A stretch of 64,000 nt of DNA from Haliotis rufescens (GCF_023055435.1 NW_025963846.1:28954001-29018000), one strand, 5' to 3'. Positions 11,669 to 55,466 are shown, counted from the stretch's first letter. Notes: a model not told the origin generated them from the letters alone. Numbers and translations are program-made.

Positions 11669-13321
11669 CTAAATGAATGAAGGTTTAAATGCGTCCAAAA
11701 ACATGTTTAGGAACTTTGTAATTATACCTGTATACAGCTTTAAACGAACATTCTCTGCTGTTGGGCGTCTGGATATCTCTCTCTGTAAGGCTGCCTTGAT
11801 GCAGTCTCCAAGGCGCCGGTCAGCGACACCAGGGAGTTCTATTTCCCCTCTCACTTCGGCCAGACGGCGTCCAGTGTAGTAGGCAACTAGTTTGTTGTGG
11901 TCAAATTCCTGACGCAATAAAGCATAGGCGACAGCTCCAAGAGAGAAAATATCACTTTTCTTGTCCACAGCCTCTTCAGGGGGTGAAAAAAAAGTGTTTC
12001 TTGTCCCATCGTCCCCGTCACGCTCTCTGTCAAGCTCTCCGTCACGCTCTCCGTCACGCTCTCCGTCGCGCTCTCCGTCACGCTCCCCGCCATGCTGCCG
12101 TCACGCTCTCCGTCACGCTCTCCGTCACGCTCTCCGTCGCGCTCTCCGTCACGCTCTCCGTCACACTCTCCGTCACGCTCTCCGTCACGCTCCTCGCCAT
12201 GCTGCCGTCACGCTCTCCGCCATGCTCTCCGTCACGCTCCCCGCCATGCTCTCCGTCACGCTCCCCGCCATGCTCTCCGTCACGCTCCCCGCCATGCTCT
12301 CCGTCACGCTCTCCGTCGAGCTCTCCGCCATGCTGCCGTCACGCTCTCCGTCACGCTCTCCGTCACGCTCTCCGTCGCGCTCTCCGTCACGCTCTCCGTC
12401 ACGCTCCTCGCCATGCTGCCGTCACGCTCTCCGCCATGCTCTCCGTCACGCTCCTCGCCATGCTGCCGTCACGCTCTCCGCCATGCTCTCCGTCACGCTC
12501 CCCGCCATGCTCTCCGTCACGCTCCCCGCCATGCTCTCCGTCACGCTCTCCGTCGAGCTCTCCGTCACGCTCCCCGCCATGCGCTCCGTCGCGCTCTCCG
12601 TCACGCTCCCCGCCATGCTCTCCGTCACGCTCCCCGCCATGCTCTCCGTCACGCTCTCCGTCGAGCTCTCCGTCACGCTCCCCGTCACGCTCTCCGTCAC
12701 GCTCTCCGTCACGCTCCCCGCCATGCTCTCCGTCACGCTCCCCGCCATGCTCTCCGTCACGCTCCCCGCCATGCTCTCCGTCACGCTCTCCGTCGAGCTC
12801 TCCGTCACGCTCCCCGCCATGCTCTCCGTCACGCTCTCCGTCACGCTCTCCGTCGCGCTCTCCGTCACGCTCTCCGTCACGCTCTCCTCCATGCTCTCCG
12901 TCACGCTCCCCGCCATGCTCTCCGTCACGCTCCCCGCCATGCTCTCCGTCACGCTCTCCGTCACGCTCTCCGTCGCGCTCTCCGTCACGCTCTCCGTCAC
13001 GCTCCCCGCCATGCTCTCCGTCACGCTCTCCGTCACGCTCTCCGTCGCGCTCTCCGTCGCGCTCTCCGTCACGCTCCCCGCCATGCTCTCCGTCACGCTC
13101 TCCGTCACGTTCCCCGAACTGCCCCCCGTCACGCTCCCCGAACTGCCCCCCGTCATGTTGCCCATCTTCCCTGACATGTTCCTGGGTCAGGCGACGAGCT
13201 GCCGATCCAAATCCTCCTATTTGAAAACTCGGTCCAAAGTACCGTGTCAATAGGATGTTTTCTGGCTGTATATTTCCGTGTATGATACCAATGTTATGAA
13301 GAAACTGTAAACCACTGGCAA
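11669..13321 (-). pseudogene. Type A pseudokinase pseudogene (K0): N-lobe and promoter deleted, activation-segment repeat expanded and frameshifted
   Basis: ASGLQFLHNIGIIHGNIQPENIL...IGGFGSAARR (ORF 12399-13463) and DKKSDIFSLG...RRPTAE (ORF 11669-11968) lie in different frames. The 5' end is fused to a LINE fragment at 13321. Confidence 0.9.
12010..13155. repeat. 12-bp coding minisatellite (ccgtcacgctct and variants), ~95 units
   Basis: Seen directly. Encodes ERDG/EHGG on the minus strand and contains five 11-nt variants (ccatgctgccg). Confidence 0.95.
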
Positions 13322-14225
13322 GAGAAAATGATTCATTATGATATTCCAACTTGTCAGGAGTGTAATAATAAGAAGAAGAACAAGATGCTGTTGTTTTCAC
13401 TAATTTATTTGCGATGTCTTGTTTACTTGTCAGAATAGTATCATGAACTTTGTGATGATGCACACCGTGTCACGATCACTTGCCCTTCATTTTCTGTATC
13501 ATGTTCCACACTTTATTTAGAGGCGTTTGAGTACTTGTTTTAGAAACAAATGCATGCCAGGAAGAACGTTTTGTTCCTTTCATCGTCATATGAGCTTTTG
13601 CTCTTAACATTTAAGGTTGTTGAGATGAGTCGGTGATGGATTAGTATTAAAAACGTTTTCAGCCTTTTCTAGCTTGTCTGCAGTCATCATTTAACCGTGG
13701 CTTTCTAATACGTGGAACTGTGGAGGATTTAGGAATAGTGGTCATGGCGAAATCATTGACATCCTGTGAAAAGGATTCAATAGGATCAACATTCTGATAC
13801 GATTCAGATACAAATTTGTCAGTACATAACTTCTGGAATAGAGTCTAGTTAGCTTCACTGAAATTTCATCGAGAAACTGGAATCTCTTTGGTAGGTGTAA
13901 CGATTTTAAGAAGTGTTGGAAAATGATAGCTCCAACAAAGATCATTATGTACTGTCCATTCAAAATCATTCAAAAGTGAAGGATCTGCAATTGTAAGATC
14001 GAGGGCTGAATTTGTCCTTGTAGCTGGATGGAGGTAGGTATTTGAGTCATCATTACAAATACAGAATATTGTTGATAAGAAATTGTTCTATGACGCTGCC
14101 TTTGTTGTTCAATGGGTTGCTGCCCCAAAGGGGAATGTGTCCATGCAAATCGCCCATTATTAGGAAGGGTATGGGAAGTTGATCGACCAAATTCTGAAAT
14201 GTCACGAGTTGTGTAAAAGAAGAAA
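13322..14225 (-). mobile_element. Degraded LINE fragment (endonuclease and downstream region, I/Nimb-like)
   Basis: LVDQLPIPFLIMGDLHGHIPLWGS resembles the APE-domain motif GDFNAH.xWGS. Duplicated at 23453-24445. Confidence 0.7.
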
Positions 14226-14227
14226 GT

Positions 14228-16957: not shown

Positions 16958-16993
16958 TTATTTGTATTAGGGTATGTATGACAGACTATGATT

Positions 16994-17165
16994 CTACCAG
17001 GTATTCTTGATAAGGTGAGCGTATCCTAAAACTTCCCTATTAAGGCCTTCTATGTTGAAACCCTGATCAAACAACTTTTGGCCAAGAGTCTTACGACGCT
17101 GTTTAAAATCTACATAGAAAGGGCATGCTCGGACCACAAATGCTGTGGCTGCTGGAATATTGCTC
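16994..17165 (-). mobile_element. Penelope-like element fragment (post-RT helical region)
   Basis: SNIPAATAF...RACPFYVDFKQRRKTLGQKLFDQGF resembles the PLE linker SNIP...RACS.Y.DF..R...L..KL..QG. Repeated in every spacer. Confidence 0.6.
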
Positions 17166-18281
17166 CGGGTACGTGTTATCATGCTGTAGCTGCTGGAATA
17201 TCGCTCCGGGTAAGTGTTATCATGTTGTAGCTGCTGAAATATCGCTCCGGGTACGTGTTATCATGCTGTAGCTGCTGGAATATTGCTCCGGGTACGTGTT
17301 ATCATTCTGTAGCTGCTGGAATATCGCTCCGGGTACGTGTTATCATGCTGTAGCTGCTGGAATATTGCTCCGGGCACGTGTTATCATGCTGTACCTGCTG
17401 GAATATCGCTCCGGGTACGTGTTATCATGCTGTATCTGCTTGAATATTAATCCGGAGACTTGTTATCATGCTGTAGCTGCTGGAATATCGCTCCGGGTAC
17501 GTGTTATCATGCTGTAGCTGCTGCAATATTGCTCCGGGTACGTGTTATCATGCTGTAGCTGTTAGAATATTGCTCCGGGTAGGTGTTATCATGCTGTAGC
17601 TGCTGGAATATCGCTCCGGGTACGTGTTATCATGCTGTAACTGCTGGAATGTTACTCCGGGTACGTGTTATCATGCTGTAGCTGCTGCAATATTGCTCCG
17701 GGTACGTGTTATCATGCTGTAGCTGCTAGAATATTGCTCCGGGTACGTGTTATCATGCTGTAGCTGCTGGAATATCGCTCCGGGTACGTGTTATCATGCT
17801 GTAGCTGCTGGAATATTGCTCCGGGTACGTGTTATCATGCTGTAGCTGCTGCAATATTGCTCCGGGTACGTGTTATCATGCTGTATCTGCTGGAATATCG
17901 CTCAGGATACGTGTTATCATGCTGTAGCTGCTGCAATATTGCTCCGGGTACGTGTTATCATGCTGTAGCTGCTGGAATATCGCTCCGGGTACGTGTTATC
18001 ATGCTGTAGCTGCTGGAATATCGCTCCGGATACGTGTTATCATGCTGTAGCTGCTGCAATATTGCTCCGGGTACGTGTTATCATGCTGTAGCTGCTGGAA
18101 TATCGCTTTGGGTACGTGTTATCATGCTGTAGCTGCTGCAATATTGCTCCGGGTACGTGTTATCATGCTGTAGCTGCTGCAATATTGCTCCGGGTACGTG
18201 TTATCATGCTGTAGCTGCTGGAATATCGCTCCGGGAACGTGTTATCATGCTGTATCTGCTGGAATATCGCTCCGGATACGT
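17142..18281. repeat. 41-bp minisatellite, ~28 copies
   Basis: Unit gctgtagctgctggaatatcgctccgggtacgtgttatcat, head-to-tail with no spacers. Confidence 0.95.
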
Positions 18282-20466: not shown

Positions 20467-20749
20467 TGAGTGAGTGAGTGAGTTGGGTTTAACGCCGCTT
20501 TTAACATTATTCCAGTTATATCACGGCGTGTCAGCTTAATGTGGGAGGAAAGCCCGAAGTGATGCAGGTCTCAGACGTTTACCACTTCGGTGAAACCCAC
20601 GAGCACGGGTATGGTGCTGACAAACCTAGAAACATAATCGGGGTGAACAGGGATTCGAACCCACAATCATAGGTGTCTGGCGTGTCCAGGGGACGCAACT
20701 CTGCACAGCGAATCGCGGCGCCTTAGACGACTGGGCCACCCGTGCCCCC
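20467..20749 (-). mobile_element. SINE family 1 inserted into the last codons of K1
   Basis: TSD cagtaatag at 20458-20466 and 20750-20758. Supplies the codons GGTGGPVV and the stop. Confidence 0.9.
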
Positions 20750-21940
20750 CAGTAATAGAGTAAGACCACCAACACCAAAACAACCCAAAACGAAACCCAA
20801 CCCAAAGCTTTCACAAGCCTCTCTTTTCCGAATAGCATTCAAGTAATCTCTATTCAGCCTTTCCCAAACTTCTTCTGCTGTTGGGCGTCCAACTATATCT
20901 CCTTTTAAGGCTTCATTGATGATGTCTCGCAGTCCCTGGTAAGTGATGTGAGGGAGGTCTATTTCCCCTGCCATCTCGGCCAGACGGCGTCCAGTGTAGT
21001 AGGCAACTAGTTTGTTGTGGTCAAATTCCTGACGCAATAAAGCAAAGGCGACAGCTCCAAGAGAGAAAATATCACTTTTCTTGTCCAGAGCCTCTTCAGG
21101 GGGTGAAAAAATAGTGTTTCTGGTCCCATCGTCCCCGTCACGCTCCCCGCCACGCTCTCCGTCACGCTCTCCGTCGCGCTCCCCGCCATGCTCTCCGTCA
21201 CGCTCCCCGCCATGCTCTCCGTCACGCTCTCCGTCACGCTCCCCGCCATGCTCTCCGTCACGCTCCCCGCCATGCTCTCCGTCACGCTCTCCGTCGCGCC
21301 CCCGACCATGCTCTCCGTCACGCTCTCCGTTGAGCTCTCCGTCACGCTCTCCGTCACGCTCTCCGTCACGCTCCCCGCCATGCTCTCCGTCACGCTCTCC
21401 GTCACGCTCCCCGCCATGCTCTCCGTCGCGCTCTCCGTCACGTTCCCCGAATTGTCCCCCGTCATGTTGCCCATCTTCCCTGACGTGTTCCTGCGTCGGG
21501 CGACGAGCTGCCGATCCAAATCCTCCTATTTTATAACTCGGTTCATCGTACCGTGTCACTAGGATGTTTTCCGGCTGTATATTTCCGTGTATGATACCAA
21601 TGTTATGAAGAAACTGTAAACCACTGGCAATGTTGGCCATGACATAAAGACAGTCGACCTCGCCTAGAGGACTCTTCATGGTTAAACGTTTACTCACATA
21701 CTGGTCCAGGTTGCCCATCTCGCAATATTCAAAGGTCAATGTGAAGTCTTCTGTAGTAACATGGATATCACCAATCATCTTTAGAATGTTTTTCGATTCT
21801 GCACATTTTTGTAGTATGTCCCTTTCGGTGGCTACACATATTCGTGAACACACAAGGTTTTTTTCAAGAACCGTTTTACTACCTTTTTTACCCTTTCTCA
21901 CTGTTGAGAACTGACCCTGGACAAGATCTGTTTCCGCCAT
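20723..21940 (-). CDS. Type A tail-anchored pseudokinase (K1), 405 aa, ERDG/EHGG repeat in the activation segment
   Basis: ATG at 21940 (MAETDLVQGQF), aligned with the paralog starts. Motifs: VLEK, TERDIL, FEYCEMGNL, HGNIQPENIL, KIGGFG, SPPE, KSDIFSLG, RPTAE. C-terminal FGLGFVLGCFGVGGLTLLL. Confidence 0.9.
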   Translation of the reverse strand: MAETDLVQGQFSTVRKGKKGSKTVLEKNLVCSRICVATERDILQKCAESKNILKMIGDIHVTTEDFTLTFEYCEMGNLDQYVSKRLTMKSPLGEVDCLYVMANIASGLQFLHNIGIIHGNIQPENILVTRYDEPSYKIGGFGSAARRPTQEHVREDGQHDGGQFGERDGERDGEHGGERDGERDGEHGGERDGERDGERDGELNGERDGEHGRGRDGERDGEHGGERDGEHGGERDGERDGEHGGERDGEHGGERDGERDGERGGERDGDDGTRNTIFSPPEEALDKKSDIFSLGAVAFALLRQEFDHNKLVAYYTGRRLAEMAGEIDLPHITYQGLRDIINEALKGDIVGRPTAEEVWERLNRDYLNAIRKREACESFGLGFVLGCFGVGGLTLLLGGTGGPVV

Positions 21941-25329: not shown

Positions 25330-27487
25330 ACACACACTGCCTGCCACCACCACCACCCTACACCACCCCTAAAAAATGACTGGTCCCTTGATCTAAACTT
25401 TAAAGAAAGGTAAAAGATGTTTTGTTACACTTGAATGACATGTCAACCTGAATAAAACAGTATTTTTTAAACATAATACCTGAAACATTTTGTTCCTTCA
25501 AATGTCATATCACAAATGCAAGAATATTCTTAAGGATAAATATGATCAAACGATTCAGAGAAAAAGAAAAAGAAAGACTCACAGAAAAAGTCAATATTAC
25601 AGTACGTTTTCACCTTAACACTAAAATGACATTTTGTGCAGATATGTACGCAGCGGATCATGTGGTCAGGCTCGCTGATTTGGTTTATGTATGTCATTGT
25701 GTCCCAATTGCGTGGATCGATGCTCATGATGTCAATCACTGGATTGTCTGGTCCAGACTCGATTAATTACAGACGACGTCATGTAGCTGGAATATTGATG
25801 AGTGCGGCGTAAACAACAAACAAAGTTGCAAAGTGCGGAATAGAAACCTAGCTGAAAACAACGAATTCTTGGCAGCTTCCAATTCGGAACATGCTGTCGT
25901 ACCCTATCAGTAATTATCGGTTTGTGTGTTTGTATTAGACCCTTTTATTGTCTTTATTAAGTGGAAACCAAAAACTATGTTGAATTTAATTGTTAATTGC
26001 TCATTGATCGTGATCGGTCATTTACTGATTTCACAGTTTAGTTCTTTACCTACAGATTATAGCTCGGCCTTGAGTCGGCACACATCTGTATATTTCGTTG
26101 TCAACAGGCTATATTAAGGAGGGGACAGGCCACAGTAACAACGTGTGAAAATACGCATAATGACGGAAAGCGCACGTAAAATCTCAAAATAGTCATGACA
26201 GTCAAAGCAGGTGAGGTGAAATTTGGTTTAACGTCGCGTCCAAGATTATTGCACTTATATAGCGACGTGCATGTACGTGTGTTTGTGTGTGTGGCTGCTT
26301 GTACTAGTCCGGACTGATGCCGATATATAGGGCTAGCCCACTGAGATACCATGCCGCAGTTTAACATGAATACCCCACTCAGACACAGTATACTGACTCC
26401 AATCCGACCAGTACTTGTTTTAGCCCCTTAATGCCGAGCACCAGACAGGGTAACAACAAGTACCATATTTTAACGTCTTTTGGTATGACGCGGCCGTGGA
26501 TCGAGCCCCGGACCTTCCGCTCTCCGGGCGGACGCTCTACCACTAGACCACGGAGGCGGTCGACAGTCATAACAACTGATTCAGGACACCAACCATGGGC
26601 TCAGTTAACCGAAATACACAGAAGTAGGTGCGATAGTCATAACAATTGAATGAGTTAATACAGAACGTCGCGACAAAGCATTTCCATAATCACAAGGAAT
26701 CTCTGCTAAAATCGGAGTCCAGTGTTCTATTCCGCCTATATCGTAATCAAGCACGTGTTGTTAATCACTATAGCGATGCTACTGGACTAACATCTAGTCT
26801 CTGAAATGAACATATCTTACAGTAAAACAACAGTTGTTAAAATATTTCAATAAAAATATAATAAAAATGAACCCAGAGACTCTCTTCATTTCGTAGATAC
26901 CTTATGCTGCAGTAATCTAGACTTGCCAACGTTATAGACTTACATGGGCTGTATTGAATATGTTTGTGTAAGTGAGTTGGATTTAACGCCGCTTTTAACA
27001 GTATTCCAGTTATATCACGGCGTGTCAGCTTAATGTGGGAGGAAAGCCCGAAGTGATGCAGGTCTCAGACGTTTACCACTTCGGTGAAACCCACGAGCAC
27101 GGGTATGGTTCTGACAAACCTAGAAACATAATTAGGGCGAAACGGGATTCGAACCCACAATCATAAGTTTCTGGTGTGCCCAAGGGACGCAACTCTGCAG
27201 AGCGAATCGCTGGGCCTTAGACGACTGGGCCACCCGTGCCCCCTTATTTGTATTAGGGTATGTATGACAGACTATGATTCTACCAGGTATTCTTGATAAG
27301 GTGAGCGTATCCTGTACTATCGGTCATCACAAACACACGCAAGGGCAAATCAAACGTTCACATGTAAACCATAAAACTTCCCTATTAAGGCCTTTTATGT
27401 TGTAACCCTGATCAAACAACTTTTGGCCAAGAGTCTTACGACGCTGTTTAAAATCTACATAGAAAGGGCATGCTCTGACCACAAATG

Positions 27488-31110: not shown

Positions 31111-32124
31111 TCACTGGCGACGCAGGAACACACCAATACCAACACCAATTCCAATCGCACAGATTGCAAGGTAGCCATAAGCCAGTTTCATCAAAACAGG
31201 ATCCGAGTAAACTGTTTTCAGCATTTCACAAACTTGTTCTGCAGTTGGGCGTTTGGACATGTCTCTCCGTAAGGCTGCCTTGATCACGTCTCCCAGTCCC
31301 TGGTCAGCGACATGACGGAGTTTCATTTCCCCTCTTACCTCGGCCAGACGGCGTCCATTGTAGTAGGCAACTAGTTTGTCGTCGTCGAATTCAGAACGCA
31401 ATAAAGCAAAGGCGATAGCGCCAAGAGAGAAAATATCACTTTTATCTGTCAGAGCCGCTTCAGGGGGTGAAAAACAAGTGTCTCCTGTCCCATCGTTCTC
31501 GTCATGTTCCCCATCTTCCCCGTCATGTACGCCAAAATGTCCCTCGTCATGTACGCCAAAATGTCCCCCGTCATGTACGCCAAAATGTCCCCCGTCATGT
31601 ACACTAAACTGTCCCCCGTCATGATCCCCGCCATGTCTCCTGTCACGTTCCAGGCCACGTCTCCCGTCATATTCCGACAACGAGCGAGCCGATCCAAATC
31701 CTGCTATTTTATAAACCGCTCGATTGTACCATGTCACAAGGATGTTTTCTGGCTGCAGGTTACGGTGTTCTATACGCAAGTTATGAAGAAACTCCAATCC
31801 ACTGCCAATGTCGGTTACGACAGAACGACAGTCGGCCTCGTCTAGAGGATTCTTCGAGTTTGAACGTTTACTCACATACTGGTCCAGGCTGCCTTCCTCG
31901 CAATATTCAAAGGTCAGTGTGAAGCCATCTGCAGTAAAACTATCACCAGTCATCTTGACAATGTTCTTGGCCCCTTCAGATTCTGCACATTGTCGGAGTA
32001 TGTTCTTTTCGGCGGCTGCTTGACGTTGTGAGCAGACAAGTACTTTCTCAACAACCATTTTGTTACCTTTCTTTTCCTTGCGCACTCTTGAGAACCGACC
32101 AGGAACAAGTTCTATTCCCGCCAT
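31111..32124 (-). CDS. Type B tail-anchored pseudokinase (K2), 337 aa
   Basis: LVPGRFSRV, VVEK, AEKNIL, HRNLQPENIL, KIAGFG, VHDGGHFG-like repeats (8 aa longer than the other B copies), SPPE, KSDIFSLG, RPTAE. Tail LAYGYLAICAIGIGVGIGVFL followed by RRQ. Confidence 0.92.
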   Translation of the reverse strand: MAGIELVPGRFSRVRKEKKGNKMVVEKVLVCSQRQAAAEKNILRQCAESEGAKNIVKMTGDSFTADGFTLTFEYCEEGSLDQYVSKRSNSKNPLDEADCRSVVTDIGSGLEFLHNLRIEHRNLQPENILVTWYNRAVYKIAGFGSARSLSEYDGRRGLERDRRHGGDHDGGQFSVHDGGHFGVHDGGHFGVHDEGHFGVHDGEDGEHDENDGTGDTCFSPPEAALTDKSDIFSLGAIAFALLRSEFDDDKLVAYYNGRRLAEVRGEMKLRHVADQGLGDVIKAALRRDMSKRPTAEQVCEMLKTVYSDPVLMKLAYGYLAICAIGIGVGIGVFLRRQ

Positions 32125-33023
32125 TCTTCGTATTCGTGGAATACAACTCCTCTGAACAGTCTCAAGGAAATGCGACGTAGTAGTTAGATTCGGTGACGTG
32201 AAGTTATATTTAGACTGAACACCTGACCGAGAGTCAGTAGGTCAGGTCGTGGTTCAGATAACCCCTGTTGTTATCTAAGGCCATCAGGACGACCATCCTT
32301 CGTCACTACTCGCCTCTTTCCGTAGCTTCTCCCGGAATGAACCACGACATGTGGTATTCAGCAGAACCATGTAAACAGTTTATCAAGGACAATGATCGAA
32401 AAATACTGATTACCTCGTAATTTGATGAGGATTTACTGTACAGTCAATTACTTAGCGTGGGATCCAAAGCGAGAAGGGCCAGAGTCACCTGTGTATAAGG
32501 TCATGTCACAGTAAAGGTCAATATTACAGAATGTTTGCAATGCAGGGTTGTTATTTGAATACTTAACACTTATGAGCGACGAGTGTTGACAATCTTATGA
32601 TACGAGGAGTTGGTCATGGTCTTGGCCTTTGATGGAGTCCTTGGCTTTATTTTTGGTCCTTTGCTTATTTTGGTTTTCGCACGGACACGGGATTTGCATG
32701 TAGGGGTCGTTGTTCATCCGTTGCTTGTGGCTGTGGAAGGTGGAGTCCAAGGGCACTTGTTTTTGGTCTTCACATCGATTTGCCGTAAACCACACATCAC
32801 AGTTATAATATGTGACAGAATCCTTTTCACAAAGCTACAAAGTGGCCGAATTGTGGTATCCGTGGCACCATTGACAGACAGTGTGGTCAACTAAATCTCC
32901 CATTCACAATGTTAGTGGTTGGTTGTATTGTGGACTCCACAGCTGGCTCTCTACATATCCACACAGTTTCACTTCATATTGATCCATAGAAATATATTGG
33001 GATAATGATCTCGTTAATTTTTT

Positions 33024-33890
33024 CTAAATTATATCCCATTGTTTCAGTGTTATTTCTGAAATATATGCAGACACAACTACAACGCCGCCAAAAATCAGAA
33101 TATTCCACCACGTGTAACCTGTATTCAGCATTGAACAAACTTGTTCTGCTGTTGGGCGTCCAGCTATATCTCCTTTTAAGGCTTCATTGATGATGTCTCG
33201 CAGTCTCTGGTCAGTGATGTGACGGAGGTCTATTTCCCCTGCCATCTTGGCCAGATGACGTCCACCATAGTAGGCAACTAGTTTGTCGTTGACAAATTGC
33301 GGACTCCATAAAGCATAGGTGACAGCTCCAAGGGAGAAAATATCACTTTTCTTGTCCAGAGCCCCTTCAGGGGGCAAAAAACAAGAGTCTTCAGTCGCAT
33401 CTAACCCACCATGTTCCTCAACTCTCCTGTTATTTCTCCTGGCCTTGCGACGAGCTGCCGATCCAAATCCTCCTATTTTATAAACAGGTTTACTGTATGA
33501 CGTCACAAGGATGTTTTCTGGCAGTAGGTTGCCGTGTATGATATCAATGTGGTGAAGAAACTGCAAACCACTGGCAATGTCGGTCATGAAAGAACGACAG
33601 TCCGCTGCATTCGGAGGTTTCTTCATGAATAAACGTTTACTCACATATTGGTTCAGGTTGCCTTCCTCGCAATATTCCAAGATCATTGTGACGCCTTTTG
33701 CAGGAAAAGCGTCATAAATCTTGACAATGTTTTTGGCCCCTTCAGATTCTGCGCATTGTCGGAGTATATTCTTTTCGGCGTCTGCAATCGGCTGTGGACA
33801 CGAAAATGCTTTCACAAGCACCGTTTTGTTACCTATGTTAAAGTTCCTCAATGTTGAGAACCGACCTTGAACCAGCTCTGTTTCCTTCAT
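33024..33890 (-). CDS. Type C pseudokinase with C-terminal hydrophobic segment (K3), 288 aa
   Basis: LVQGRFSTL, VLVK, AEKNIL, HGNLLPENIL, KIGGFG, basic insert RRKARRNNRR, LPPE, KSDIFSLG, RPTAE. Tail WWNILIFGGVVVVSAYI. Confidence 0.92.
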   Translation of the reverse strand: MKETELVQGRFSTLRNFNIGNKTVLVKAFSCPQPIADAEKNILRQCAESEGAKNIVKIYDAFPAKGVTMILEYCEEGNLNQYVSKRLFMKKPPNAADCRSFMTDIASGLQFLHHIDIIHGNLLPENILVTSYSKPVYKIGGFGSAARRKARRNNRRVEEHGGLDATEDSCFLPPEGALDKKSDIFSLGAVTYALWSPQFVNDKLVAYYGGRHLAKMAGEIDLRHITDQRLRDIINEALKGDIAGRPTAEQVCSMLNTGYTWWNILIFGGVVVVSAYISEITLKQWDII

Positions 33891-34520
33891 TTTTCGTATG
33901 CCTGGAATATGACTCCTCTGAATAATCTCAAGGAAATGCGACGAAGTACAGTTAGATTCAATGGCGCGTAGTTATATTTAGACTGAACACCTGACTGTGA
34001 GTCAGCCAGTCAGGTCGTGGTTCAGATAACCCCTGTTGTTACCTAAGCCCGTCAGGACTACCATCGTTCGTCACTACTCGCCTCTCTCCGTAGCTTGTCC
34101 CGGAATAACACGAGTTGGCCACGAATGAATCACTTGATATATTTAGTAACACAATGTTAATATTATCTCCATTATAGCCCAAGGCCATAGCCTGAAGAGC
34201 TCACACCAAAAAATCGATATTACAGTACGTTTTCACCTTATCACTAAAATGCCATTTGGTGCAGATATGTACTCAGCGGGTCATGTGGTCAGGCTCGCTG
34301 ATTTGGTTAATTCATGTCATCGTGTCCCAATTGCGTGGATCGATGCTCATGACATCAATCACTGGATTGTCTGGTCCAGACTCGATTAATTACAGACGGC
34401 GTCATGTACCTGGAATGTTGATGAGTGCGGCGTAAACAACAAAGTTGCAAAGTACAGAATGGAGACCTAGTTGAGGTGAGGTGAGGTGAAATTGGGTTTA
34501 AACGTCGCGTCCAAGATTAC

Positions 34521-34560
<40 letters not shown>

Positions 34561-38912: not shown

Positions 38913-39902
38913 TCACTGGCGACGCAGGAACACACCAATACCAACACCAATACCAATCGCACAGATTGCAAGGTAGCCATAAGCCAGTTTCATCAAAACA
39001 GAATCCGAGTAAACTGTTTTCAGCATTTCACAAACTTGTTCTGCTGTTGGGCGTTTGGACATGTCTCTCCGTAAGGCTGCCTTGATCACGTCTCCCAGTC
39101 CCTGATCAGCGACATGACGGAGTTCTATTTCCCCTCTTACCTCGGCCAGACGGCGTCCATTGTAGTAGGCAACTAGTTTGTCGTCGTCGAATTCAGGACG
39201 CAATAAAGCAAAGGCGATAGCGCCAAGAGAGAAAATATCACTTTTCTCTGTCAGAGCCGCTTCAGGGGGTGAAAAACAAGTGTCTCCTGCCCCATCGTTC
39301 TCGTCATGTTCCCCATCTTCCCCGTCATGTACGCCAAAATGTCCCCCGTCATGTACGCCAAAATGTCCCCCGTCATGTACGCCAAAATGTCCCCCGTCAT
39401 GATCCCCGCCATGTCTCCTGTCACGTTCCAGGCCACGTCTCCCGTCATATTCCGACAACGAGCGAGCCGATCCAAATCCTGCTATTTTATAAACCGCTCG
39501 ATTGTACCATGTCACAAGGATGTTTTCTGGCTGCAGGTTACGGTGTTCTATGCGCAAGTTATGAAGAAACTCCAATCCACTGCCAATGTCGGTTACGACA
39601 GAACGACAGTCGGCCTCGTCTAGAGGATTCTTCGAGTTTGAACGTTTACTCACATACTGGTCCAGGCTGCCTTCCTCGCAATATTCAAAGGTCAGTGTGA
39701 AGCCATCTGCAGTAAAACCTTCACCAATCATCTTGACAATGTTCTTGGCCCCTTCAGATTCTGCACATTGTCGGAGTATGTTCTTTTCGGCGGCTGCTGT
39801 ACGTTGTGAGCAGACAAGTACTTTCTCAACAACCATTTTGTTACCTTTCTTTTCTTTGCGCACACTTGAGGACCGACCAGGAACAAGTTCTATTCCCGCC
39901 AT
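38913..39902 (-). CDS. Type B pseudokinase (K4), 329 aa
   Basis: Intact paralog of K2 with the same motifs. Confidence 0.92.
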   Translation of the reverse strand: MAGIELVPGRSSSVRKEKKGNKMVVEKVLVCSQRTAAAEKNILRQCAESEGAKNIVKMIGEGFTADGFTLTFEYCEEGSLDQYVSKRSNSKNPLDEADCRSVVTDIGSGLEFLHNLRIEHRNLQPENILVTWYNRAVYKIAGFGSARSLSEYDGRRGLERDRRHGGDHDGGHFGVHDGGHFGVHDGGHFGVHDGEDGEHDENDGAGDTCFSPPEAALTEKSDIFSLGAIAFALLRPEFDDDKLVAYYNGRRLAEVRGEIELRHVADQGLGDVIKAALRRDMSKRPTAEQVCEMLKTVYSDSVLMKLAYGYLAICAIGIGVGIGVFLRRQ

Positions 39903-46688: not shown

Positions 46689-47678
46689 TCACTGGCGACG
46701 CAGGAACACACCAATACCAACACCAATACCAATCGCACAGATTGCAAGGTAGCCATAAGCCAGTTTCATCAAAACAGAATCCGAGTAAACTGTTTTCAGC
46801 ATTTCACAAACTTGTTCTGCTGTTGGGCGTTTGGACATGTCTCTCCGTAAGGCTGCCTTGATCACGTCTCCCAGTCCCTGATCAGCGACATGACGGAGTT
46901 CTATTTCCCCTCTTACCTCGGCCAGACGGCGTCCATTGTAGTAGGCAACTAGTTTGTCGTCGTCGAATTCAGGACGCAATAAAGCAAAGGCGATAGCGCC
47001 AAGAGAGAAAATATCACTTTTATCTGTCAGAGCCGCTTCAGGGGGTGAAAAACAAGTGTCTCCTGCCCCATCGTTCTCGTCATGTTCCCCATCTTCCCCG
47101 TCATGTACGCCAAAATGTCCCCCGTCATGTACGCCAAAATGTCCCCCGTCATGTACGCCAAAATGTCCCCCGTCATGATCCCCGCCATGTCTCCTGTCAC
47201 GTTCCAGGCCACGTCTCCCGTCATATTCCGACAACGAGCGAGCCGATCCAAATCCTGCTATTTTATAAACCGCTCGATTGTACCATGTCACAAGGATGTT
47301 TTCTGGCTGCAGATTACGGTGTTCTATACGCAAGTTATGAAGAAACTCCAATCCACTGCCAATGTCGGTTACGACAGAACGACAGTCGGCCTCGTCTAGA
47401 GGATTCTTCGAGTTTGAACGTTTACTCACATACTGGTCCAGGCTGCCTTCCTCGCAATATTCAAAGGTCAGTGTGAAGCAATCTGCAGTAAAACCTTCAC
47501 CAATCATCTTGACAATGTTCTTGGCCCCTTCAGATTCCCCGCATTGTCGGAGTATGTTCTTTTCGGCGGCTGCTTGAAGTTGTGAGCAGACAAGTACTTT
47601 CTCAACAACCATCTTGTTACCTTTCTTTTCCTTGCGCACTCTTGAGAACCGACCAGGAACAAGTTCTATTCCCGCCAT
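46689..47678 (-). CDS. Type B pseudokinase (K6), 329 aa
   Basis: Intact paralog of K2 and K4. Confidence 0.92.
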   Translation of the reverse strand: MAGIELVPGRFSRVRKEKKGNKMVVEKVLVCSQLQAAAEKNILRQCGESEGAKNIVKMIGEGFTADCFTLTFEYCEEGSLDQYVSKRSNSKNPLDEADCRSVVTDIGSGLEFLHNLRIEHRNLQPENILVTWYNRAVYKIAGFGSARSLSEYDGRRGLERDRRHGGDHDGGHFGVHDGGHFGVHDGGHFGVHDGEDGEHDENDGAGDTCFSPPEAALTDKSDIFSLGAIAFALLRPEFDDDKLVAYYNGRRLAEVRGEIELRHVADQGLGDVIKAALRRDMSKRPTAEQVCEMLKTVYSDSVLMKLAYGYLAICAIGIGVGIGVFLRRQ

Positions 47679-48577: not shown

Positions 48578-49444
48578 CTAAATTATATCCCATTGTTTCA
48601 GTGTTATTTCTGAAATATATGCAGACACAACTACAACGCCGCCAAAAATCAGAATATTCCACCACGTGTAACCTGTATTCAGCATTGAACAAACTTGTTC
48701 TGCTGTTGGGCGTCCAACTATATCTCCTTTTAAGGCTTCATTGATGATGTCTCGCAGTCTCTGGTCAGTGATGTGACGGAGGTCTATTTCCCCTGCCATC
48801 TTGGCCAGATGACGTCCACCATAGTAGGCAACTAGTTTGTCGTTGACAAATTGCGGACTCCATAAAGCACAGGTGACAGCTCCAAGGGAGAAAATATCAC
48901 TTTTCTTGTCCAGAGCCCCTTCAGGGGGCAAAAAACAAGAGTCTTCAGTCGCATCTAACCCACCATGTTCCTCAACTCTCCTGTTATTTCTCCTGGCCTT
49001 GCGACGAGCTGCCGATCCAAATCCTCCTATTTTATAAACAGGTTTACTGTATGACGTCACAAGGATGTTTTCTGGCAGTAGGTTGCCGTGTATGATATCA
49101 ATGTGGTGAAGAAACTGCAAACCACTGGCAATGTCGGTCATGAAAGAACGACAGTCCGCTGCATTCGGAGGTTTCTTCATGAATAAACGTTTACTCACAT
49201 ATTGGTTCAGGTTGCCTTCCTCGCAATATTCCAAGATCATTGTGACGCCTTTTGCAGGAAAAGCGTCATAAATCTTGACAATGTTTTTGGCCCCTTCAGA
49301 TTCTGCGCATTGTCGGAGTATATTCTTTTCGGCGTCTGCAATCGGCTGTGGACACGAAAATGCTTTCACAAGCACCGTTTTGTTACCTATGTTAAAGTTC
49401 CTCAATGTTGAGAACCGACCTTGAACCAGCTCTGTTTCCTTCAT
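48578..49444 (-). CDS. Type C pseudokinase (K7), 288 aa
   Basis: One amino-acid difference from K5 (VTYAL->VTCAL). Confidence 0.92.
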   Translation of the reverse strand: MKETELVQGRFSTLRNFNIGNKTVLVKAFSCPQPIADAEKNILRQCAESEGAKNIVKIYDAFPAKGVTMILEYCEEGNLNQYVSKRLFMKKPPNAADCRSFMTDIASGLQFLHHIDIIHGNLLPENILVTSYSKPVYKIGGFGSAARRKARRNNRRVEEHGGLDATEDSCFLPPEGALDKKSDIFSLGAVTCALWSPQFVNDKLVAYYGGRHLAKMAGEIDLRHITDQRLRDIINEALKGDIVGRPTAEQVCSMLNTGYTWWNILIFGGVVVVSAYISEITLKQWDII

Positions 49445-50122: not shown

Positions 50123-53100
50123 TCTGCTGCTTGTACTAGTCCGGACTGATGCCGATTTATAGTGCTAGCCCATTGAGATACCATGCCACAGTTTAACATG
50201 AATACCCCACTCAGACACAGTATACTGACTCCGAGCCGACTAGTCCTTGTTTTATCCCCTTAATGCCGAGCACCAGACAGGGTAACAACAAGTACCATAT
50301 TTTAACGTCTTTTGGTATGACGCGGCCGGGGATCGAGCCCCGGACCTTCCGCTCTCCGGGCGGACGCTCTACCACTAGACCACGGAGGCGGTCGACAGTC
50401 ATAGCAACTGATTCAGGACACCAACCATGGGCTCAGTTAACCGAAATACACAGAAGTAGGTGCGATAGTCATAACAATAGAATGAGTTAATACAGAACGT
50501 CGCGACAAAGCATTTCCATAATCACAAGGAATCTCTGCTAAAATCGGAGTCCATTGTTCTATTCCGCCTATATCGTAATCAAGCACGTGTTGTTAATCAC
50601 TATAGCGATGCTACTGGACTAACATCTAGTCTCTGAAGTGAACGTATCTCACAGAAAAACAACAGTTGTTAAATTATCTTAATAAAAATATAATAAAAAT
50701 GAACCCAGAGACTCTCTTCATTTCGTAGATACCTTATGCTGCAGTAATCTAGACTTGCCAACGTTATAGACTTACATGGGCTGTATTGAATATATTTGTA
50801 TTAGTGAGTAAAGGAGTTGGATTTAACGCCGCTTTTAGCAGTATTCCAGTTATATCGCGGCGTGTCAGCTTAATGTGGGAGGAAAGCCCGAAGTGATGCA
50901 CGCCTCAGACGTTTACCACTTCGGTGAAACCCACGAGCACGGGTATGGTTCTGACAAACCTAGAAACATAATTAGGGCGAACCGGGATTCGAACCCACAA
51001 TCATAGGTTTCTGGTGTGCCCAAGGGACGCAACTCTGCAGAGCGAATCGCTGGGCCTTAGACGACTGGGCCACCCGTGCCCCCTTATTTGTTTTAGGGTA
51101 TGTATGACAGACTATGATGCTACCAGGTATTCTTGATAAGGTGAGCCTATCCTGTCCTATCGGTGGCAACCCGTCACAAACACACGCAAGGGCAAATCAA
51201 ACGTTCACATGTAAACCATAAAACTTCCCTATTAAGGCCTTCTATGTTGTAACCCTGATCAAACAATTTTTGGCCAAGAGTCTTACGACGCTGTTTGAAA
51301 TCTACATAGAAAGGGCATGCTCGGACCACAAATGCTGTAGCTGCTGGAATATCGCTCCGGGTACGTGTTATCATGCTGTAGCTGCTGGAATATCGCTCCG
51401 GGTACGTGTTATCATGCTGTGGCTGCTGGAATATTGCTCCGGGTACGTGTTATCATGCTGTAGCTGCTGGAATATCGCTCCGGGTACGTGTTATCATGCT
51501 GTAGCTGCTGCAATATCGCTCCGGGTACGTGTTATCATGCTGTAGCTGCTGGAATATTGCTCCGGGTACGTGTTATCATTCTGTAGCTGCTGGAATATCG
51601 CTCCGGGTACGTGTTATCATGCTGTAGCTGCTGGAATATCGCTCCGGGTACGTGTTATCATGCTGTAGCTGCTGGAATATTGCTCCGGGTACGTGTTATC
51701 ATGCTGTAGCTGCTGGAATATCGCTCCGGGTACGTGTTATCATGCTATAGCTGCTGGAATATCGCTCCAGGTACGTGTTATCATGCTGTAGCTGCTGGAA
51801 TATTGCTTCTGTTCAGCGAGATCGCCCGACGCACACTGCATGCGACACACTCTTATAGTACATGTGGTATACTGGAGTGGGTGAGTGAGTTGGGTTTAAC
51901 GCCGCTTTCAACAGTATTCCAGTTATATCACGGCATGTCAGCTTTATGTGGGAGGAAAGCCCGAAGTGATGCAGGTCTCTGACGTTTACCACTTTGGTGA
52001 AATCCAAGAGCACGGGTATGGTGCTGACAAACCTAGAAACATAATCAGAGCGAACCGGGATTCGAACCCACAATCATAGGTTTCTGGCGTGCCCAAGGGA
52101 CTCAACTCTGCACAGCGAATCGCGGCGCCTTGGACGACTGGGCCACCCGTGCCCCCGGTATACTAGATATTGCACTTGATAAACGGTATACTGCATGTAA
52201 TATACGTTTCGGTCGTGACAAAGGTCATGCCCTCACGTCCTCAATAAGGGTTGTGAATGATGTATAGTGGACAATCGATATGAGTGCATAAAAAAATGAA
52301 TTGTTTGCAAACATTGTCTTATTGCTGAGCAATAATTATTATAGATAGACATGGATTTTGAATTGAATTTGCTGTGGACCACTTTTATATTTAATAATGT
52401 ACAATACGACTAACTAAATACATTGACATACATACATCCATGATACAGAATCAAGCAAATATACATACGAATGCTTATGCTGGTTGATAAGAATTGGGCA
52501 TCAGCAATGAAAACATTGCTTGATACGAGGGCTGGTCAAAAAGCTCTAAGCCTGACTAACTTTCATCTATGGGTCATTAGAACAATCAATGTACAGTGAA
52601 CTACGGTTATAACGAACACGCTTATAACGAACTAACGGATATAACGAACTAACTTTTTAGTCCCAACTATTTGCTGTAGCTATACTGTATATATGCTTAT
52701 AACGAATTACGGTTATAACGAACTAAAATTAGTAGTCCCTTTGAGTTCGTTATAACCGTAGTTTACTGTAGTACATTGTTGTAGTAGTTCATTGCCCGTG
52801 TATTTGATCTGTTGAGGCCGTTTGCATATTTGTGATGGCCAGTTGAACATAATTAAAGTTTAGTGCGTCAACATTTTCCTCAGTCTGATGCTATTCAAAT
52901 GTTGATGGCAGTATCGTGAAATGTACAGAAGCTAACATATTCGTGTGTATTTATTCAAGTAAGATATGAGTAAGGACCAGGTTCTATGCCACAATAGTTT
53001 GTAATGTTGTTGTTTGTTATATATCATTGTTTTTATGACAACAGTGTGTGGCATTGTGAAGCATGCTTAAGTGCGTGTATGTCATATTTCACTGAAACCC

Positions 53101-54476
53101 AGTAATGCGGTTCAATACCACTGGAGATAGAACTGGGTCGATCCCGACGCCCACCGACTCCCCTACTGGAACGTGGGGTTGGGGTTGGGGTGGTGTGGTG
53201 TGGGGTGGTGTGGGGTGGGGTGGTGTGGGGTGGGGTGGGGTGGGGTGGGATGGTGTGGGGTGGGGTGGGGTGGGGTGGTGTGGGGTGGTGTGGGGTGGTT
53301 ATAACCGTAGTTTACTGTAGTACATTGTTTGAGTAGTTCATTGCCCGTGTATTTGATCTATTGAGGCCGTTTGCATATTTGTGATGGCCAGTTGAACATA
53401 ATTAAAGTTTAGTGCGTCAACATTTTCCTCAGTCTGAGAGAGAACAATGGTCATTACAGTTATGAATGGGGCAACGGCGATCGGAGGGAGTAGAGATGGC
53501 AGGCTGGACGAGAGTAGATGGGATATGGGATACATTGGGAGGAGGAGGGGGGGTTGTGTGTGTCTTATTTGCACGTTTGGGTTTTCGGCGGATCCTCAAA
53601 GGAAAACAAGTCTTACTGGTGGGTGCACCATCATCGGAGCTTGTAGTTTTAAACGAGGAAAGAGACATTGTAACTTACAGACTTAACAAGAATGACAAAG
53701 TTGTATTCACACTTACCCAGAGGAAATATAAAACTGTAAACACAAAACACTAAAAGTCACCAAGTCACTGACACATGGCATTGAGTTCAGTTGGAATGTT
53801 TTGCCTTTGATGAAGTCCTTGGTTTTCTTTTAGTTACTGCGCGGACAGGGCTTCGCATGTAGGGGTCGTTGTTCATGCGTTGCTTGCAGCTGTGGAAAGT
53901 GGAGTCCAAGGGTACTAGTTGTTCTTCACATCAGTTTGCCGTAAACCACACATCACAGTTATAATATGTGACAGAATCCTTTTCACCAAGCTACAAAGTG
54001 TCTGAATTGTGGTTTACGTGGCACAATTCACAGACAGTGTGGTCAACTGATCTCCTATTCACGATGTTGGTGGCTGCCTTCGTCAAGCTGACTTGTGCTG
54101 TAGACTCAGGATGGAAGGATATCGTCCACAGCTGGCTCCCTACATACCACATACACAGTGTCACTTCATATTTGAGTGTCCCAGTGATGCCTCATCCATA
54201 GAAATAGATTGGCACAATGATCCAGTGAAGTTTGAGAAATATATCTCTCTATCAAGTCGTAATTCTTGTGATGAAAATGTTACACCAGATGCGCAGTACG
54301 AGCAGACTTCCAACAAGGATATTCCTTTATATTTATGACAATACTCGTTCAAAGTAATCTCCTGCATGAAAATGATTTGCACAACTATAGATACTGTAGG
54401 AGACAATGTAGACTACTTCAGAATTCAAGTCATTTCCTCGGTGATCTGTTTGAGTAAATGCAGACAGGCTCCCTTT

Positions 54477-55466
54477 TCACTGGCGACGCAGGAACACACC
54501 AATACCAACACCAATACCAATCGCACAGATTGCAAGGTAGCCATAAGCCAGTTTCATCAAAACAGAATCCGAGTAAACTGTTTTCAGCATTTCACAAACT
54601 TGTTCTGCTGTTGGGCGTTTGGACATGTCTCTCCGTAAGGCTGCCTTGATCACGTCTCCCAGTCCCTGATCAGCGACATGACGGAGTTCTATTTCCCCTC
54701 TTACCTCGGCCAGACGGCGTCCATTGTAGTAGGCAACTAGTTTGTCGTCGTCGAATTCAGGACGCAATAAAGCAAAGGCGATAGCGCCAAGAGAGAAAAT
54801 ATCACTTTTATCTGTCAGAGCCGCTTCAGGGGGTGAAAAACAAGTGTCTCCTGCCCCATCGTTCTCGTCATGTTCCCCATCTTCCCCGGCATGTACGCCA
54901 AAATGTCCCCCGTCATGTACGCCAAAATGTCCCCCGTCATGTACGCCAAAATGTCCCCCGTCATGATCCCCGCCATGTCTCCTGTCACGTTCCAGGCCAC
55001 GTCTCCCGTCATATTCCGACAACGAGCGAGCCGATCCAAATCCTGCTATTTTATAAACCGCTCGATTGTACCATGTCACAAGGATGTTTTCTGGCTGCAG
55101 ATTACGGTGTTCTATACGCAAGTTATGAAGAAACTCCAATCCACTGCCAATGTCGGTTACGACAGAACGACAGTCGGCCTCGTCTAGAGGATTCTTCGAG
55201 TTTGAACGTTTACTCACATACTGGTCCAGGTTGCCTTCCTCGCAATATTCAAAGGTCAGTGTGAAGCCATCTGCAGTAAAACCTTCACCAATCATCTTGA
55301 CAATGTTCTTGGCCCCTTCAGATTCCCCGCATTGTCGGAGTATGTTCTTTTCGGCGGCTGCTTGAAGTTGTGAGCAGACAAGTACTTTCTCAACAACCAT
55401 CTTGTTACCTTTCTTTTCCTTGCGCACTCTTGAGAACCGACCAGGAACAAGTTCTATTCCCGCCAT
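54477..55466 (-). CDS. Type B pseudokinase (K8), 329 aa
   Basis: Intact paralog. Last gene of the array. Confidence 0.92.
   Translation of the reverse strand: MAGIELVPGRFSRVRKEKKGNKMVVEKVLVCSQLQAAAEKNILRQCGESEGAKNIVKMIGEGFTADGFTLTFEYCEEGNLDQYVSKRSNSKNPLDEADCRSVVTDIGSGLEFLHNLRIEHRNLQPENILVTWYNRAVYKIAGFGSARSLSEYDGRRGLERDRRHGGDHDGGHFGVHDGGHFGVHDGGHFGVHAGEDGEHDENDGAGDTCFSPPEAALTDKSDIFSLGAIAFALLRPEFDDDKLVAYYNGRRLAEVRGEIELRHVADQGLGDVIKAALRRDMSKRPTAEQVCEMLKTVYSDSVLMKLAYGYLAICAIGIGVGIGVFLRRQ

What the first reader, a model, noticed from the sequence alone, without database searches (positions are those of the whole stretch)
11669..55466. Amplified cluster of intronless, membrane-tailed pseudokinases with a hypervariable activation segment
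Seen: nine co-oriented kinase-fold genes, eight intact. All intact copies keep the beta3 Lys, the alphaC Glu, a PE motif, SDIFSLG and RPT, but have lost the catalytic Asp (HGN/HRN), the catalytic-loop Lys (Q/L), the DFG Asp (GFG) and most Gly-loop glycines. Each ends in one hydrophobic segment. Known: HRD and DFG Asp residues are required for conventional catalysis; HGN occurs in JAK JH2, HRN plus AGF in mouse MLKL, and GFG in CASK. Tandem pseudokinase clusters act in host-pathogen conflict elsewhere (plant ZED1/ZRK decoys, Toxoplasma ROP5). Inference: a lineage-specific family of organelle- or membrane-anchored decoy, sensor or scaffold proteins, plausibly for immunity or stress. I do not recognise this architecture as a named family.
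Basis: partly seen in the sequence, partly recalled or inferred. Interest (0 to 1): 0.92.

Follow-up and report, generated by a model that had tools for sequence, protein, structure and literature searches.

The report
Abalone tail-anchored pseudokinase gene array
A red-abalone chromosome carries a tandemly amplified, abalone-restricted family of single-ORF genes for catalytically dead kinase domains with a C-terminal membrane anchor; they stay open reading frames while changing very fast, and their function is unknown.

Summary
The window (Haliotis rufescens, G000:C68) holds nine co-oriented minus-strand kinase-fold ORFs. Eight are intact and one is broken by a LINE and by frameshifts. They are part of at least 24 loci spread over about 254 kb.

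Every copy has HGN, HRN or HAN in place of HRD and GFG in place of DFG. The Gly-loop is degenerate. The probable beta3 Lys, the alphaC Glu, the catalytic-loop Asn, PPE, SDIFSLG and RPT are kept. A hydrophobic segment lies 3-19 residues from the C-terminus.

Types A and C carry in-frame coding minisatellites of 24 and 12 nt between GFG and PPE.

Three results argue against neutral decay:
- ORFs are retained across a tree of 0.61 substitutions per site.
- Indels in the CDS are all in frame, while most flank indels are not.
- About a quarter of N-lobe codons have omega near 0.

No relative closer than generic kinases was found outside H. rufescens and H. cracherodii. RefSeq gives the members inconsistent automatic names. 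Transcription is likely but not proven.

An immune or decoy role remains speculation. The same window carries sibling notes from this scan (s1-810294, s1-810441, s1-810440, s1-810255). I class it as a new variant of a known kind, the pseudokinase.

The parts
11672..13469 (-). Broken family copy (pseudogene). The catalytic-loop piece (HGNIQPENIL, GFG) lies in the open frame 12402-13469. The C-lobe piece (SDIFSLG, RPTAE) lies in another frame at 11672-12100. The N-lobe is replaced by LINE-like sequence upstream.
   Evidence: 12-nt array 12015-13140
12015..13140 (-). Expanded 12-nt minisatellite of 94 copies (G-E-R-D / G-E-H-G codons) inside the broken copy, with frame changes
20723..21940 (-). 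Type C gene, 405 aa from the ATG: HGN, GFG, a long GERD/GEHG repeat between GFG and PPE, and a Gly-rich hydrophobic tail
21135..21449 (-). Coding 12/24/36-nt minisatellite in the activation segment of type C
31111..32124 (-). Type A gene, 337 aa: HRN at 120-122, GFG at 142-144, PPE at 220-222. The tail YLAICAIGIGVGIGVFL is followed by RRQ and the stop.
31528..31623 (-). Coding 24-nt repeat (HDGGHFGV). This copy has 4 units; the 329-aa type A copies have 3.
33024..33890 (-). Type B gene, 288 aa: HGN at 119-121, GFG at 141-143, PPE at 173-175, no repeats, and a hydrophobic segment at about 262-278
38913..39902 (-). Type A gene, 329 aa, identical to a RefSeq H. rufescens protein in cluster P0004
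40802..41668 (-). Type B gene, 288 aa
46689..47678 (-). Type A gene, 329 aa
48578..49444 (-). Type B gene, 288 aa
54477..55466 (-). Type A gene, 329 aa
31111..54476 (-). Three tandem A+B units of 7,776-7,802 bp, 98.7-99.0% identical over their whole length
33971..33980 (-). TATA-like TAAATATAAC about 80-90 nt upstream of the type B ATG, inside a roughly 215-nt 5' flank alignable between types
32203..32212 (-). The same TATA-like box upstream of the type A ATG
32717..32776 (-). Small alternative 3' exon used by RefSeq type B models such as P0001. It replaces the membrane tail.

Best explanation
What it is. This is an abalone-restricted family of single-ORF genes. Each encodes a bare kinase domain that cannot catalyse conventional phosphotransfer, because the HRD Asp and the DFG Asp are missing in every copy. 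A short linker and one C-terminal transmembrane segment follow, so the protein is tail-anchored.

Shown here:
- the kinase fold;
- the motif losses;
- the tails;
- the tandem amplification, as 7.8-kb A+B units inside a cluster of about 254 kb;
- the in-frame coding minisatellites between GFG and PPE in types A and C;
- very fast protein evolution together with preserved reading frames.

Inferred:
- The protein is inserted after translation, with the pseudokinase domain on the cytosolic face of an internal membrane. For type A, the short Gly-rich segment followed by RRQ suggests the mitochondrial outer membrane or the ER.
- There it acts as a non-catalytic docking or decoy module.
- Its surface, and the length of its disordered activation-segment arm, are diversified by duplication, gene conversion, repeat slippage and selection.
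- The most likely ancestor is one of the intronless PDIK1L/STK35-like kinase genes scattered in the same genome.

Odds: that this is a protein-coding, tail-anchored pseudokinase family, about 0.85. That it works as a docking or decoy module in some evolutionary conflict, about 0.3.
For: - Fold: Pfam Pkinase; PDB profile hits to ULK, MNK, Aurora and PLK4 at 1e-13 to 1e-15; AF2 pLDDT 87.8 and generic kinase fold matches, MLKL among them.
- Motifs: all 35 ORF entries of the census (about 24 distinct loci) have HGN, HRN or HAN; GFG was found in all but two, where the motif pattern found nothing.
- Tails.
- Amplification.
- Repeats.
- Coding status, stops: the simulated chance of staying stop-free is 0.05-0.08 on the type C and D terminal branches alone. 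The product over terminal branches is 3e-4, and the whole tree is 0.61 substitutions per site.
- Coding status, indels: real CDS indels are 3, 6 or 9 nt, while flank indels are mostly 1, 2 or 10 nt and denser.
- Coding status, site heterogeneity: M1a beats M0 in the N-lobe (p = 2e-5) with about 25% of codons at omega near 0. The catalytic-loop windows have omega 0.4-0.47.
- Fast evolution: omega 0.6-1.2 pairwise. M2a beats M1a at p = 6.5e-4 in the N-lobe and p = 0.022 in the C-lobe.
- Restriction: a profile search of 1.84 billion representatives finds only the family's own cluster above 215 bits. Word-based searches find only H. rufescens and H. cracherodii proteins.
- Origin: the best relative by name is an H. 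rubra pdik1l-A-like protein at 33% identity. The in-genome places that match the family at 32-38% also match that protein at 35-42% as single open frames of 294-369 aa.
- Likely expression: contigs from four small runs, guessed to be RNA, from four studies tile 30100-33990 unspliced. RefSeq gene models exist.
Against: - Omega is not distinguishable from 1 under M0.
- The CDS is no better conserved than its flanks: 78-81% against 81-83% between types A and B.
- Several copies are truncated or broken.
- Most intact copies are duplicates about 99% identical, so they are not independent evidence.
- Gene conversion, seen as mosaic identity between A and C, can inflate site tests.
- The kind of the sequencing runs is only guessed, and no silent control stretch was available.
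- RefSeq type B models drop the tail.
- The beta3 Lys register is ambiguous in one alignment.
- No data on localisation, partners, nucleotide binding or phenotype.
Confidence: 0.55

Rival explanations
1. It is a decaying array. A kinase retrogene lost its catalytic residues, was amplified recently by unequal crossing-over, and now drifts neutrally. The intact ORFs reflect youth and gene conversion, not function.
For: - Omega is about 1.
- The flanks are as conserved as the CDS.
- Units are 98.7-99% identical.
- Broken and truncated copies exist.
- TE and satellite-rich surroundings.
Against: - The catalytic losses are shared by all types, so they predate a divergence of 0.61 substitutions per site. 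Over that divergence five or six distinct types stayed stop-free.
- CDS indels are in frame only, whereas flank indels are frequent and mostly out of frame.
- Omega is heterogeneous, and the kinase core motifs are invariant.
- Hydrophobic tails are kept even where the tail sequence was replaced or frameshifted.
Confidence: 0.15
2. They are atypical but active enzymes. They would use the retained Lys, Glu and catalytic-loop Asn for Mg-independent phosphotransfer or another nucleotide-dependent reaction, as some proteins once called pseudokinases do.
For: The probable beta3 Lys, the alphaC Glu and the catalytic-loop Asn are invariant, and the catalytic-loop region is the most constrained part, with omega 0.4-0.47.
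Against: The catalytic base and the metal-binding Asp are both missing in every copy. Only one Gly-loop glycine remains, and the catalytic-loop Lys is L or Q. Such fast overall evolution is unusual for enzymes.
Confidence: 0.07
3. The copy number is partly an assembly artefact: a duplicated haplotype block and collapsed or expanded tandem units. The 'amplified cluster' would then be much smaller than it looks.
For: Blocks about 128.6 kb apart are 99.8-99.95% identical.
Against: - Inside the window the three 7.8-kb units differ by about 1% and by indels.
- Distinct types A, B, B2, C, D and E coexist.
- Independent runs from several species labels hold the sequence.
- At most this would about halve the census. 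It does not remove the family.
Confidence: 0.2

Closest known systems
PDIK1L / STK35 (NKF4) type small kinases, here the intronless 'pdik1l-like' genes of Haliotis (for example H. rubra P0085)
   Same: - A single bare kinase domain of about 300-370 aa, encoded as one open frame.
- The best named relative at 33% identity.
- The same genomic places match both queries.
- One RefSeq member is named STK35-like.
   Different: P0085 has HRD and an Asp at the DFG position (DLG), and it has no hydrophobic tail. Identity is only 33%. Descent from this group is inferred, not shown by a tree.
ULK3 / ULK1/2, MNK, Aurora A, PLK4 kinase domains (best solved structures)
   Same: Kinase fold. Sequence E-values down to 2.6e-15.
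   Different: All of these are active kinases with HRD/HLD and DFG, extra domains and no C-terminal anchor. The matches are generic and the fold search ranks many families equally.
MLKL and other pseudokinases lacking the HRD and/or DFG Asp
   Same: A kinase fold with substitutions at the catalytic motifs. MLKL pseudokinase domains rank 8 and 10 among the fold matches.
   Different: No four-helix-bundle executioner domain and no specific sequence relation. Membrane contact would come from a C-terminal TM segment.
Conflict-driven pseudokinase expansions (plant ZED1/ZRK, Toxoplasma ROP5), from general knowledge
   Same: Tandem, fast-evolving, catalytically degenerate kinase folds.
   Different: No homology beyond the fold, a different architecture, and no evidence here for any pathogen link.
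Branchiostoma 'pdik1l-B-like' protein P0256
   Same: 332 aa, with the catalytic Asp lost (HGG), the catalytic-loop Lys lost, and a C-terminal hydrophobic tail.
   Different: It keeps DFG. It appears as one protein 87% identical between Branchiostoma species, with no close paralogues found. It is only 28% identical to type B. The likeness is probably convergent.
Tail-anchored proteins as a class
   Same: No signal peptide, and one hydrophobic segment 3-19 residues from the C-terminus.
   Different: Insertion and target membrane are untested. RefSeq type B isoforms omit the tail.

Membership tests
Eukaryotic protein kinase superfamily (Pfam PF00069) | Significant match to the kinase-domain profile and a bilobal kinase fold | tested here: met
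   E = 6e-26 to 6.5e-21, above the gathering score. AF2 pLDDT 87.8. All 500 counted fold matches have E <= 0.001, and every listed one is a kinase or pseudokinase domain.
Pseudokinase (operational class) | Loss of at least one of the beta3 Lys, the HRD Asp or the DFG Asp | tested here: met
   The HRD Asp is N and the DFG Asp is G in every copy where the motif was found.
Pseudokinase (operational class) | Lack of phosphotransfer activity | not testable with these tools
   Needs a kinase assay on recombinant protein.
Tail-anchored membrane proteins | A single TM segment within about 30-40 residues of the C-terminus and no N-terminal signal sequence | tested here: met
   Kyte-Doolittle means 1.7-2.35 with 3-19 residues after the segment, in types A, B, B2, B3, C and D. 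The N-termini are hydrophilic.
Tail-anchored membrane proteins | Post-translational insertion with the N-terminal domain in the cytosol | not testable with these tools
   Needs localisation and protease-protection experiments.
PDIK1L/STK35 (NKF4) kinases | Orthology or clear subfamily grouping with PDIK1L/STK35 | tested here: inconclusive
   The best named relative is a pdik1l-A-like protein at 33% identity, and genomic matches are shared. No tree with reference NKF4 sequences was built.
ULK3 | Active HLD/DFG kinase domain plus C-terminal MIT domains | tested here: not met
   The alignment shows HGN against HLD and GFG against DFG. Pfam finds no domain other than Pkinase.
MLKL | N-terminal four-helix bundle plus brace before the pseudokinase domain | tested here: not met
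   The proteins start at the beta1 strand (residues 4-8 in the model), so there is no N-terminal extension.

The most novel reading that the evidence does not exclude
This is a germline repertoire of membrane-anchored pseudokinase decoys or sensors in north-east Pacific abalones. Tandem duplication, gene conversion and slippage of coding minisatellites in the activation segment would keep generating surface and length variants under diversifying selection. It would be an animal counterpart of the plant ZED1/ZRK or Toxoplasma ROP5 arms-race pseudokinases, possibly aimed at effectors or kinases of abalone pathogens.
Probability: 0.17. Interest if true: 0.8.

Novelty: new variant of a known kind. 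Interest (0 to 1): 0.55.

Why it matters
Pseudokinases are known as scaffolds, allosteric switches and decoys. A taxonomically young, tandemly amplified family that adds a tail anchor and minisatellite-encoded activation segments has not been described, as far as the searched papers and databases show.

If functional, the family offers a natural series of variants for asking two questions: what a naked pseudokinase domain on a membrane can do, and how coding repeats diversify a signalling fold.

It also matters for annotation. RefSeq names these paralogues after six unrelated kinases and builds chimeric models across neighbouring copies.

For abalone biology it is a candidate locus for disease or stress studies, but nothing here links it to either.

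Tried and rejected
- A first AF2 run with a 7-sequence family alignment failed (pLDDT 33). A 40-sequence alignment worked.
- The viral-origin check on IMG/VR found no relative.
- The ESM Atlas gave only generic kinase clusters.
- The top non-family hits of the exhaustive profile search are multi-kinase proteins from Tritrichomonas, an oomycete, echinoderms and a legume. They rank high only because scores of several domains add up.
- The profile search with A1 drifted to relatives of P0006, which are USP-kinase fusions from metagenomes, and added nothing.
- The search with Branchiostoma P0256 showed a separate conserved protein, not a shared family.
- Paper searches for Haliotis plus pseudokinase, tail-anchored plus pseudokinase, PDIK1L/STK35 expansion and the RefSeq names found nothing relevant.
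- I looked briefly at the 'fossil Cys/His-rich domain' in the 3' flank (note s1-810255). The flank has many stops in every frame and holds the small alternative exons of the RefSeq models. I did not pursue it.
- AATAAA sites did not settle the transcript ends.
- One search was an empty script.
Full report
WHERE AND WHAT

The window is G000:C68:28954001-29018000 of a 1.33-Gb, 615-contig assembly. One type A ORF (38913-39902) is identical to a protein that NCBI holds on a 35,286,876-base contig. The window is therefore red abalone.

All nine kinase-like ORFs lie on the minus strand:
- type C: 20723-21940;
- type A: 31111-32124, 38913-39902, 46689-47678, 54477-55466;
- type B: 33024-33890, 40802-41668, 48578-49444;
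- a broken copy: 11672-13469.

In the broken copy the N-lobe has been replaced by LINE-like sequence. The catalytic loop and the C-lobe sit in different frames on either side of a 94-copy 12-nt array. The count 'nine, eight intact' is right.

THE PROTEINS

Pfam finds only Pkinase / PK_Tyr_Ser-Thr, at E = 6e-26 to 6.5e-21. With a 40-sequence alignment AlphaFold gives type B a confident kinase fold: pLDDT 87.8 and pTM 0.84, with a long C-terminal helix at 248-287. Foldseek matches hundreds of kinases about equally, with MLKL pseudokinase domains at ranks 8 and 10. There is no specific structural relative.

The ULK3 alignment sets HGN against HLD, L against the catalytic-loop Lys, N against N, and GFG against DFG. 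Across every copy I could read, the catalytic triplet is HGN, HRN or HAN. The DFG position reads GFG wherever my pattern found the motif, which is all but two entries.

In the 40-sequence alignment K27 and E39 fall in the nearly invariant Lys and Glu columns. N126, E175 (PPE), D183 and G188 (SDIFSLG) fall in invariant columns. One HMMER alignment to ULK2 puts K22 rather than K27 opposite the VAIK Lys. The VLVK/VVEK context and the predicted beta3 strand at 22-29 favour K27.

The Gly-loop keeps one glycine. The proteins begin at beta1, so there is no N-terminal extension or signal peptide.

Types A, B, B2, B3, C and D all end in a 17-residue window of mean hydropathy 1.7-2.35 that stops 3-19 residues before the C-terminus. 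Only 3-14% of random ORF ends in the window do as well. The type B tail is frameshifted relative to type B2 and is still hydrophobic. Type E has lost the tail.

This is the architecture of a tail-anchored protein with the kinase fold in the cytosol. That topology is inferred, not shown.

REPEATS

Between GFG and PPE:
- Type A carries three or four 24-nt units (HDGGHFGV).
- Type C carries a 315-nt array of 12-nt units, about 26 copies (GERD/GEHG).
- The broken copy carries 94 units.
- Types B and D have a segment of ordinary length with no repeats.

All unit lengths are multiples of three. 'Hypervariable activation segment' is therefore true for part of the family only.

SCALE

In the window, three A+B units of 7.78-7.80 kb are 98.7-99.0% identical over coding and non-coding DNA alike. 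Each unit also holds a 41-nt satellite and high-copy repeats.

The family continues outside the window. At least 24 loci lie between 28.943 and 29.197 Mb, all on the minus strand, and include further types (B2 with HAN, D, E) and more broken copies.

A distal block recurs 128.6 kb away at 99.8-99.95% identity. This is either a very recent segmental duplication or an assembly duplicate. If it is an assembly duplicate, the census is roughly halved.

IS IT CODING OR DECAYING?

Pairwise dN/dS between types is 0.6-1.2, with dS of 0.08-0.43. I wrote my own GY94 codon likelihood script for the model tests. Under one-ratio models omega is 0.82 in the N-lobe and 1.40 in the C-lobe, and in the fits it is not different from 1. 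Between types A and B the CDS (78-81% identical) is no better conserved than the alignable flanks (81-83%).

Three results argue against neutral decay.

1. The catalytic losses are shared by all types, so they predate the family tree. That tree is 0.61 nucleotide substitutions per site long. Simulated neutral mutation leaves a type C or D ORF stop-free with probability 0.05-0.08 on its terminal branch alone. The product over terminal branches is 3e-4, and the long internal A and B stems are not even counted.
2. Real indels in the CDS between types are 3, 6 or 9 nt. Indels in the flanks are several times denser and mostly 1, 2 or 10 nt.
3. Omega is heterogeneous. M1a beats M0 in the N-lobe (p = 2e-5) with about a quarter of codons at omega near 0. 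Windows over the catalytic loop have omega 0.4-0.47.

M2a beats M1a at p = 6.5e-4 in the N-lobe (4% of sites, omega about 8) and p = 0.022 in the C-lobe (18% of sites, omega about 4). Only six sequences were used, and there is clear mosaicism: the C-terminal end and 3' flank of types A and C are 90.6% identical, against 75% in the N-lobe. I therefore treat positive selection as suggestive only.

My reading is that these are protein-coding genes under selection for an intact fold and frame, with most surface positions free or driven to change.

EXPRESSION

The index found 14 small contig sets of 49-117 Mb, guessed to be RNA, from four studies and four organism labels. Each holds 0.34-0.47 of the sampled words. 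Laid on 29900-35700, contigs from four of these runs tile 30100-33990 without a listed splice joint. They cross the type B tail region unspliced and stop 70-100 nt upstream of the type B ATG, next to a TATA-like box that types A and B share.

The run kind is a guess. The neighbouring stretches are repeats, so there was no silent control, and contigs cannot show strand or ends. Transcription is therefore likely, not shown.

RefSeq has models for the family. The type A model equals the plain ORF. The type B models all use a donor after RPTAEQ (CAA|GTTTGT) and small exons in the 3' flank, which removes the tail. Two models are chimeras of neighbouring copies.

RELATIVES AND ORIGIN

A profile search of 1.84 billion representative proteins returns the family's own cluster at 502 bits. 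Nothing else scores above 215 bits, and the next hits are multi-kinase proteins from unrelated eukaryotes. Word-based searches of 5.8 billion proteins find only H. rufescens and H. cracherodii members. H. rubra RefSeq proteins are in the database, so the family is either absent or unannotated there. IMG/VR holds no relative.

The closest named protein is an active H. rubra pdik1l-A-like kinase at 33% identity. In the red-abalone genome the places that match the family at 32-38% also match that protein at 35-42%. They are single open frames of 294-369 aa on C445 (a cluster at 13.76-13.93 Mb), C1, C501 and C101. I infer descent from this intronless PDIK1L/STK35-like group, but I could not read those loci.

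A Branchiostoma protein (HGG, DFG kept, hydrophobic tail) shows that the architecture can arise elsewhere. It appears as one protein conserved between Branchiostoma species and is only 28% identical to type B.

MECHANISM

Committed reading:
- These are tail-anchored, non-catalytic kinase folds displayed on the cytosolic face of an internal membrane.
- They act as docking or decoy modules.
- The Lys-Glu pair and the catalytic-loop Asn may still hold a nucleotide without metal.
- The repeat arms are disordered, charged and His-rich spacers of variable length.
- Diversity comes from unequal crossing-over, gene conversion and slippage.

The family identity stands at about 0.85. The docking or decoy mechanism stands at about 0.3. 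A link to immunity is no more than a guess.

VERDICT

No paper in the library describes the family.

It is a new variant of a known kind, the pseudokinase. It is of moderate interest now, and of higher interest if a function in conflict is shown.

No stretch written N (6142-6323) was touched.

Noticed in passing
window 17140-18281, 27485-28653, 35770-36245, 43538-44013, 51332-51807: A 41-nt satellite with 11.6-28.5 copies at 91-96% matches. It recurs once per unit between the kinase genes.
   Followed up: no
window 56376-57182 (+): A Tc1/mariner-type transposase remnant (HTH_29, HTH_Tnp_Tc3_2, weak DDE_3) just beyond the last type A gene.
   Followed up: partly
window 59838-61132: A (TGGGTG)n hexamer array of about 215 copies with extreme GC skew. 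The long ORFs there are repeat artefacts.
   Followed up: no
window 13479-14200 (-): LINE-like endonuclease and reverse-transcriptase fragments directly upstream of the broken copy. They probably caused the loss of its N-lobe.
   Followed up: partly
window 29899-30330: A Pro/His-rich low-complexity stretch (PTPPHP-like) at the far end of the type A 3' flank. The reads tool skipped it as a repeat.
   Followed up: no
window 34000-35500: High-copy interspersed repeats upstream of type B. Summed contig depth reaches 1e5-1e6 in all four runs.
   Followed up: no
G000:C68 29.03-29.07 Mb vs 29.16-29.20 Mb (L013/L014, L029/L030, L021/L022, L007/L009): A block repeated 128.6 kb away at 99.8-99.95% identity: a very recent segmental duplication or an assembly duplicate.
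   Followed up: partly
RefSeq proteins P0296, P0290, P0001, P0295; window 32717-32776 and 40225-40260: Two RefSeq models are chimeric: two B2 genes joined, and a type A N-part joined to a type B C-part. Other type B models use small 3' exons that drop the membrane tail.
   Followed up: partly
G000:C445 13.76-13.93 Mb, C445 47.12 Mb, C1 12.81 Mb, C501 2.39 Mb, C101 11.87 Mb: Further single-ORF PDIK1L-like kinase genes of 294-369 aa, one group of them clustered. They are probably the wider family from which the pseudokinases arose. Note s1-805588 may concern one of these.
   Followed up: partly
P0256, P0304, P0305 (Branchiostoma): A 332-aa kinase-fold protein conserved between Branchiostoma species, with HGG in place of HRD and a C-terminal hydrophobic tail. 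It looks like an independent tail-anchored pseudokinase.
   Followed up: partly
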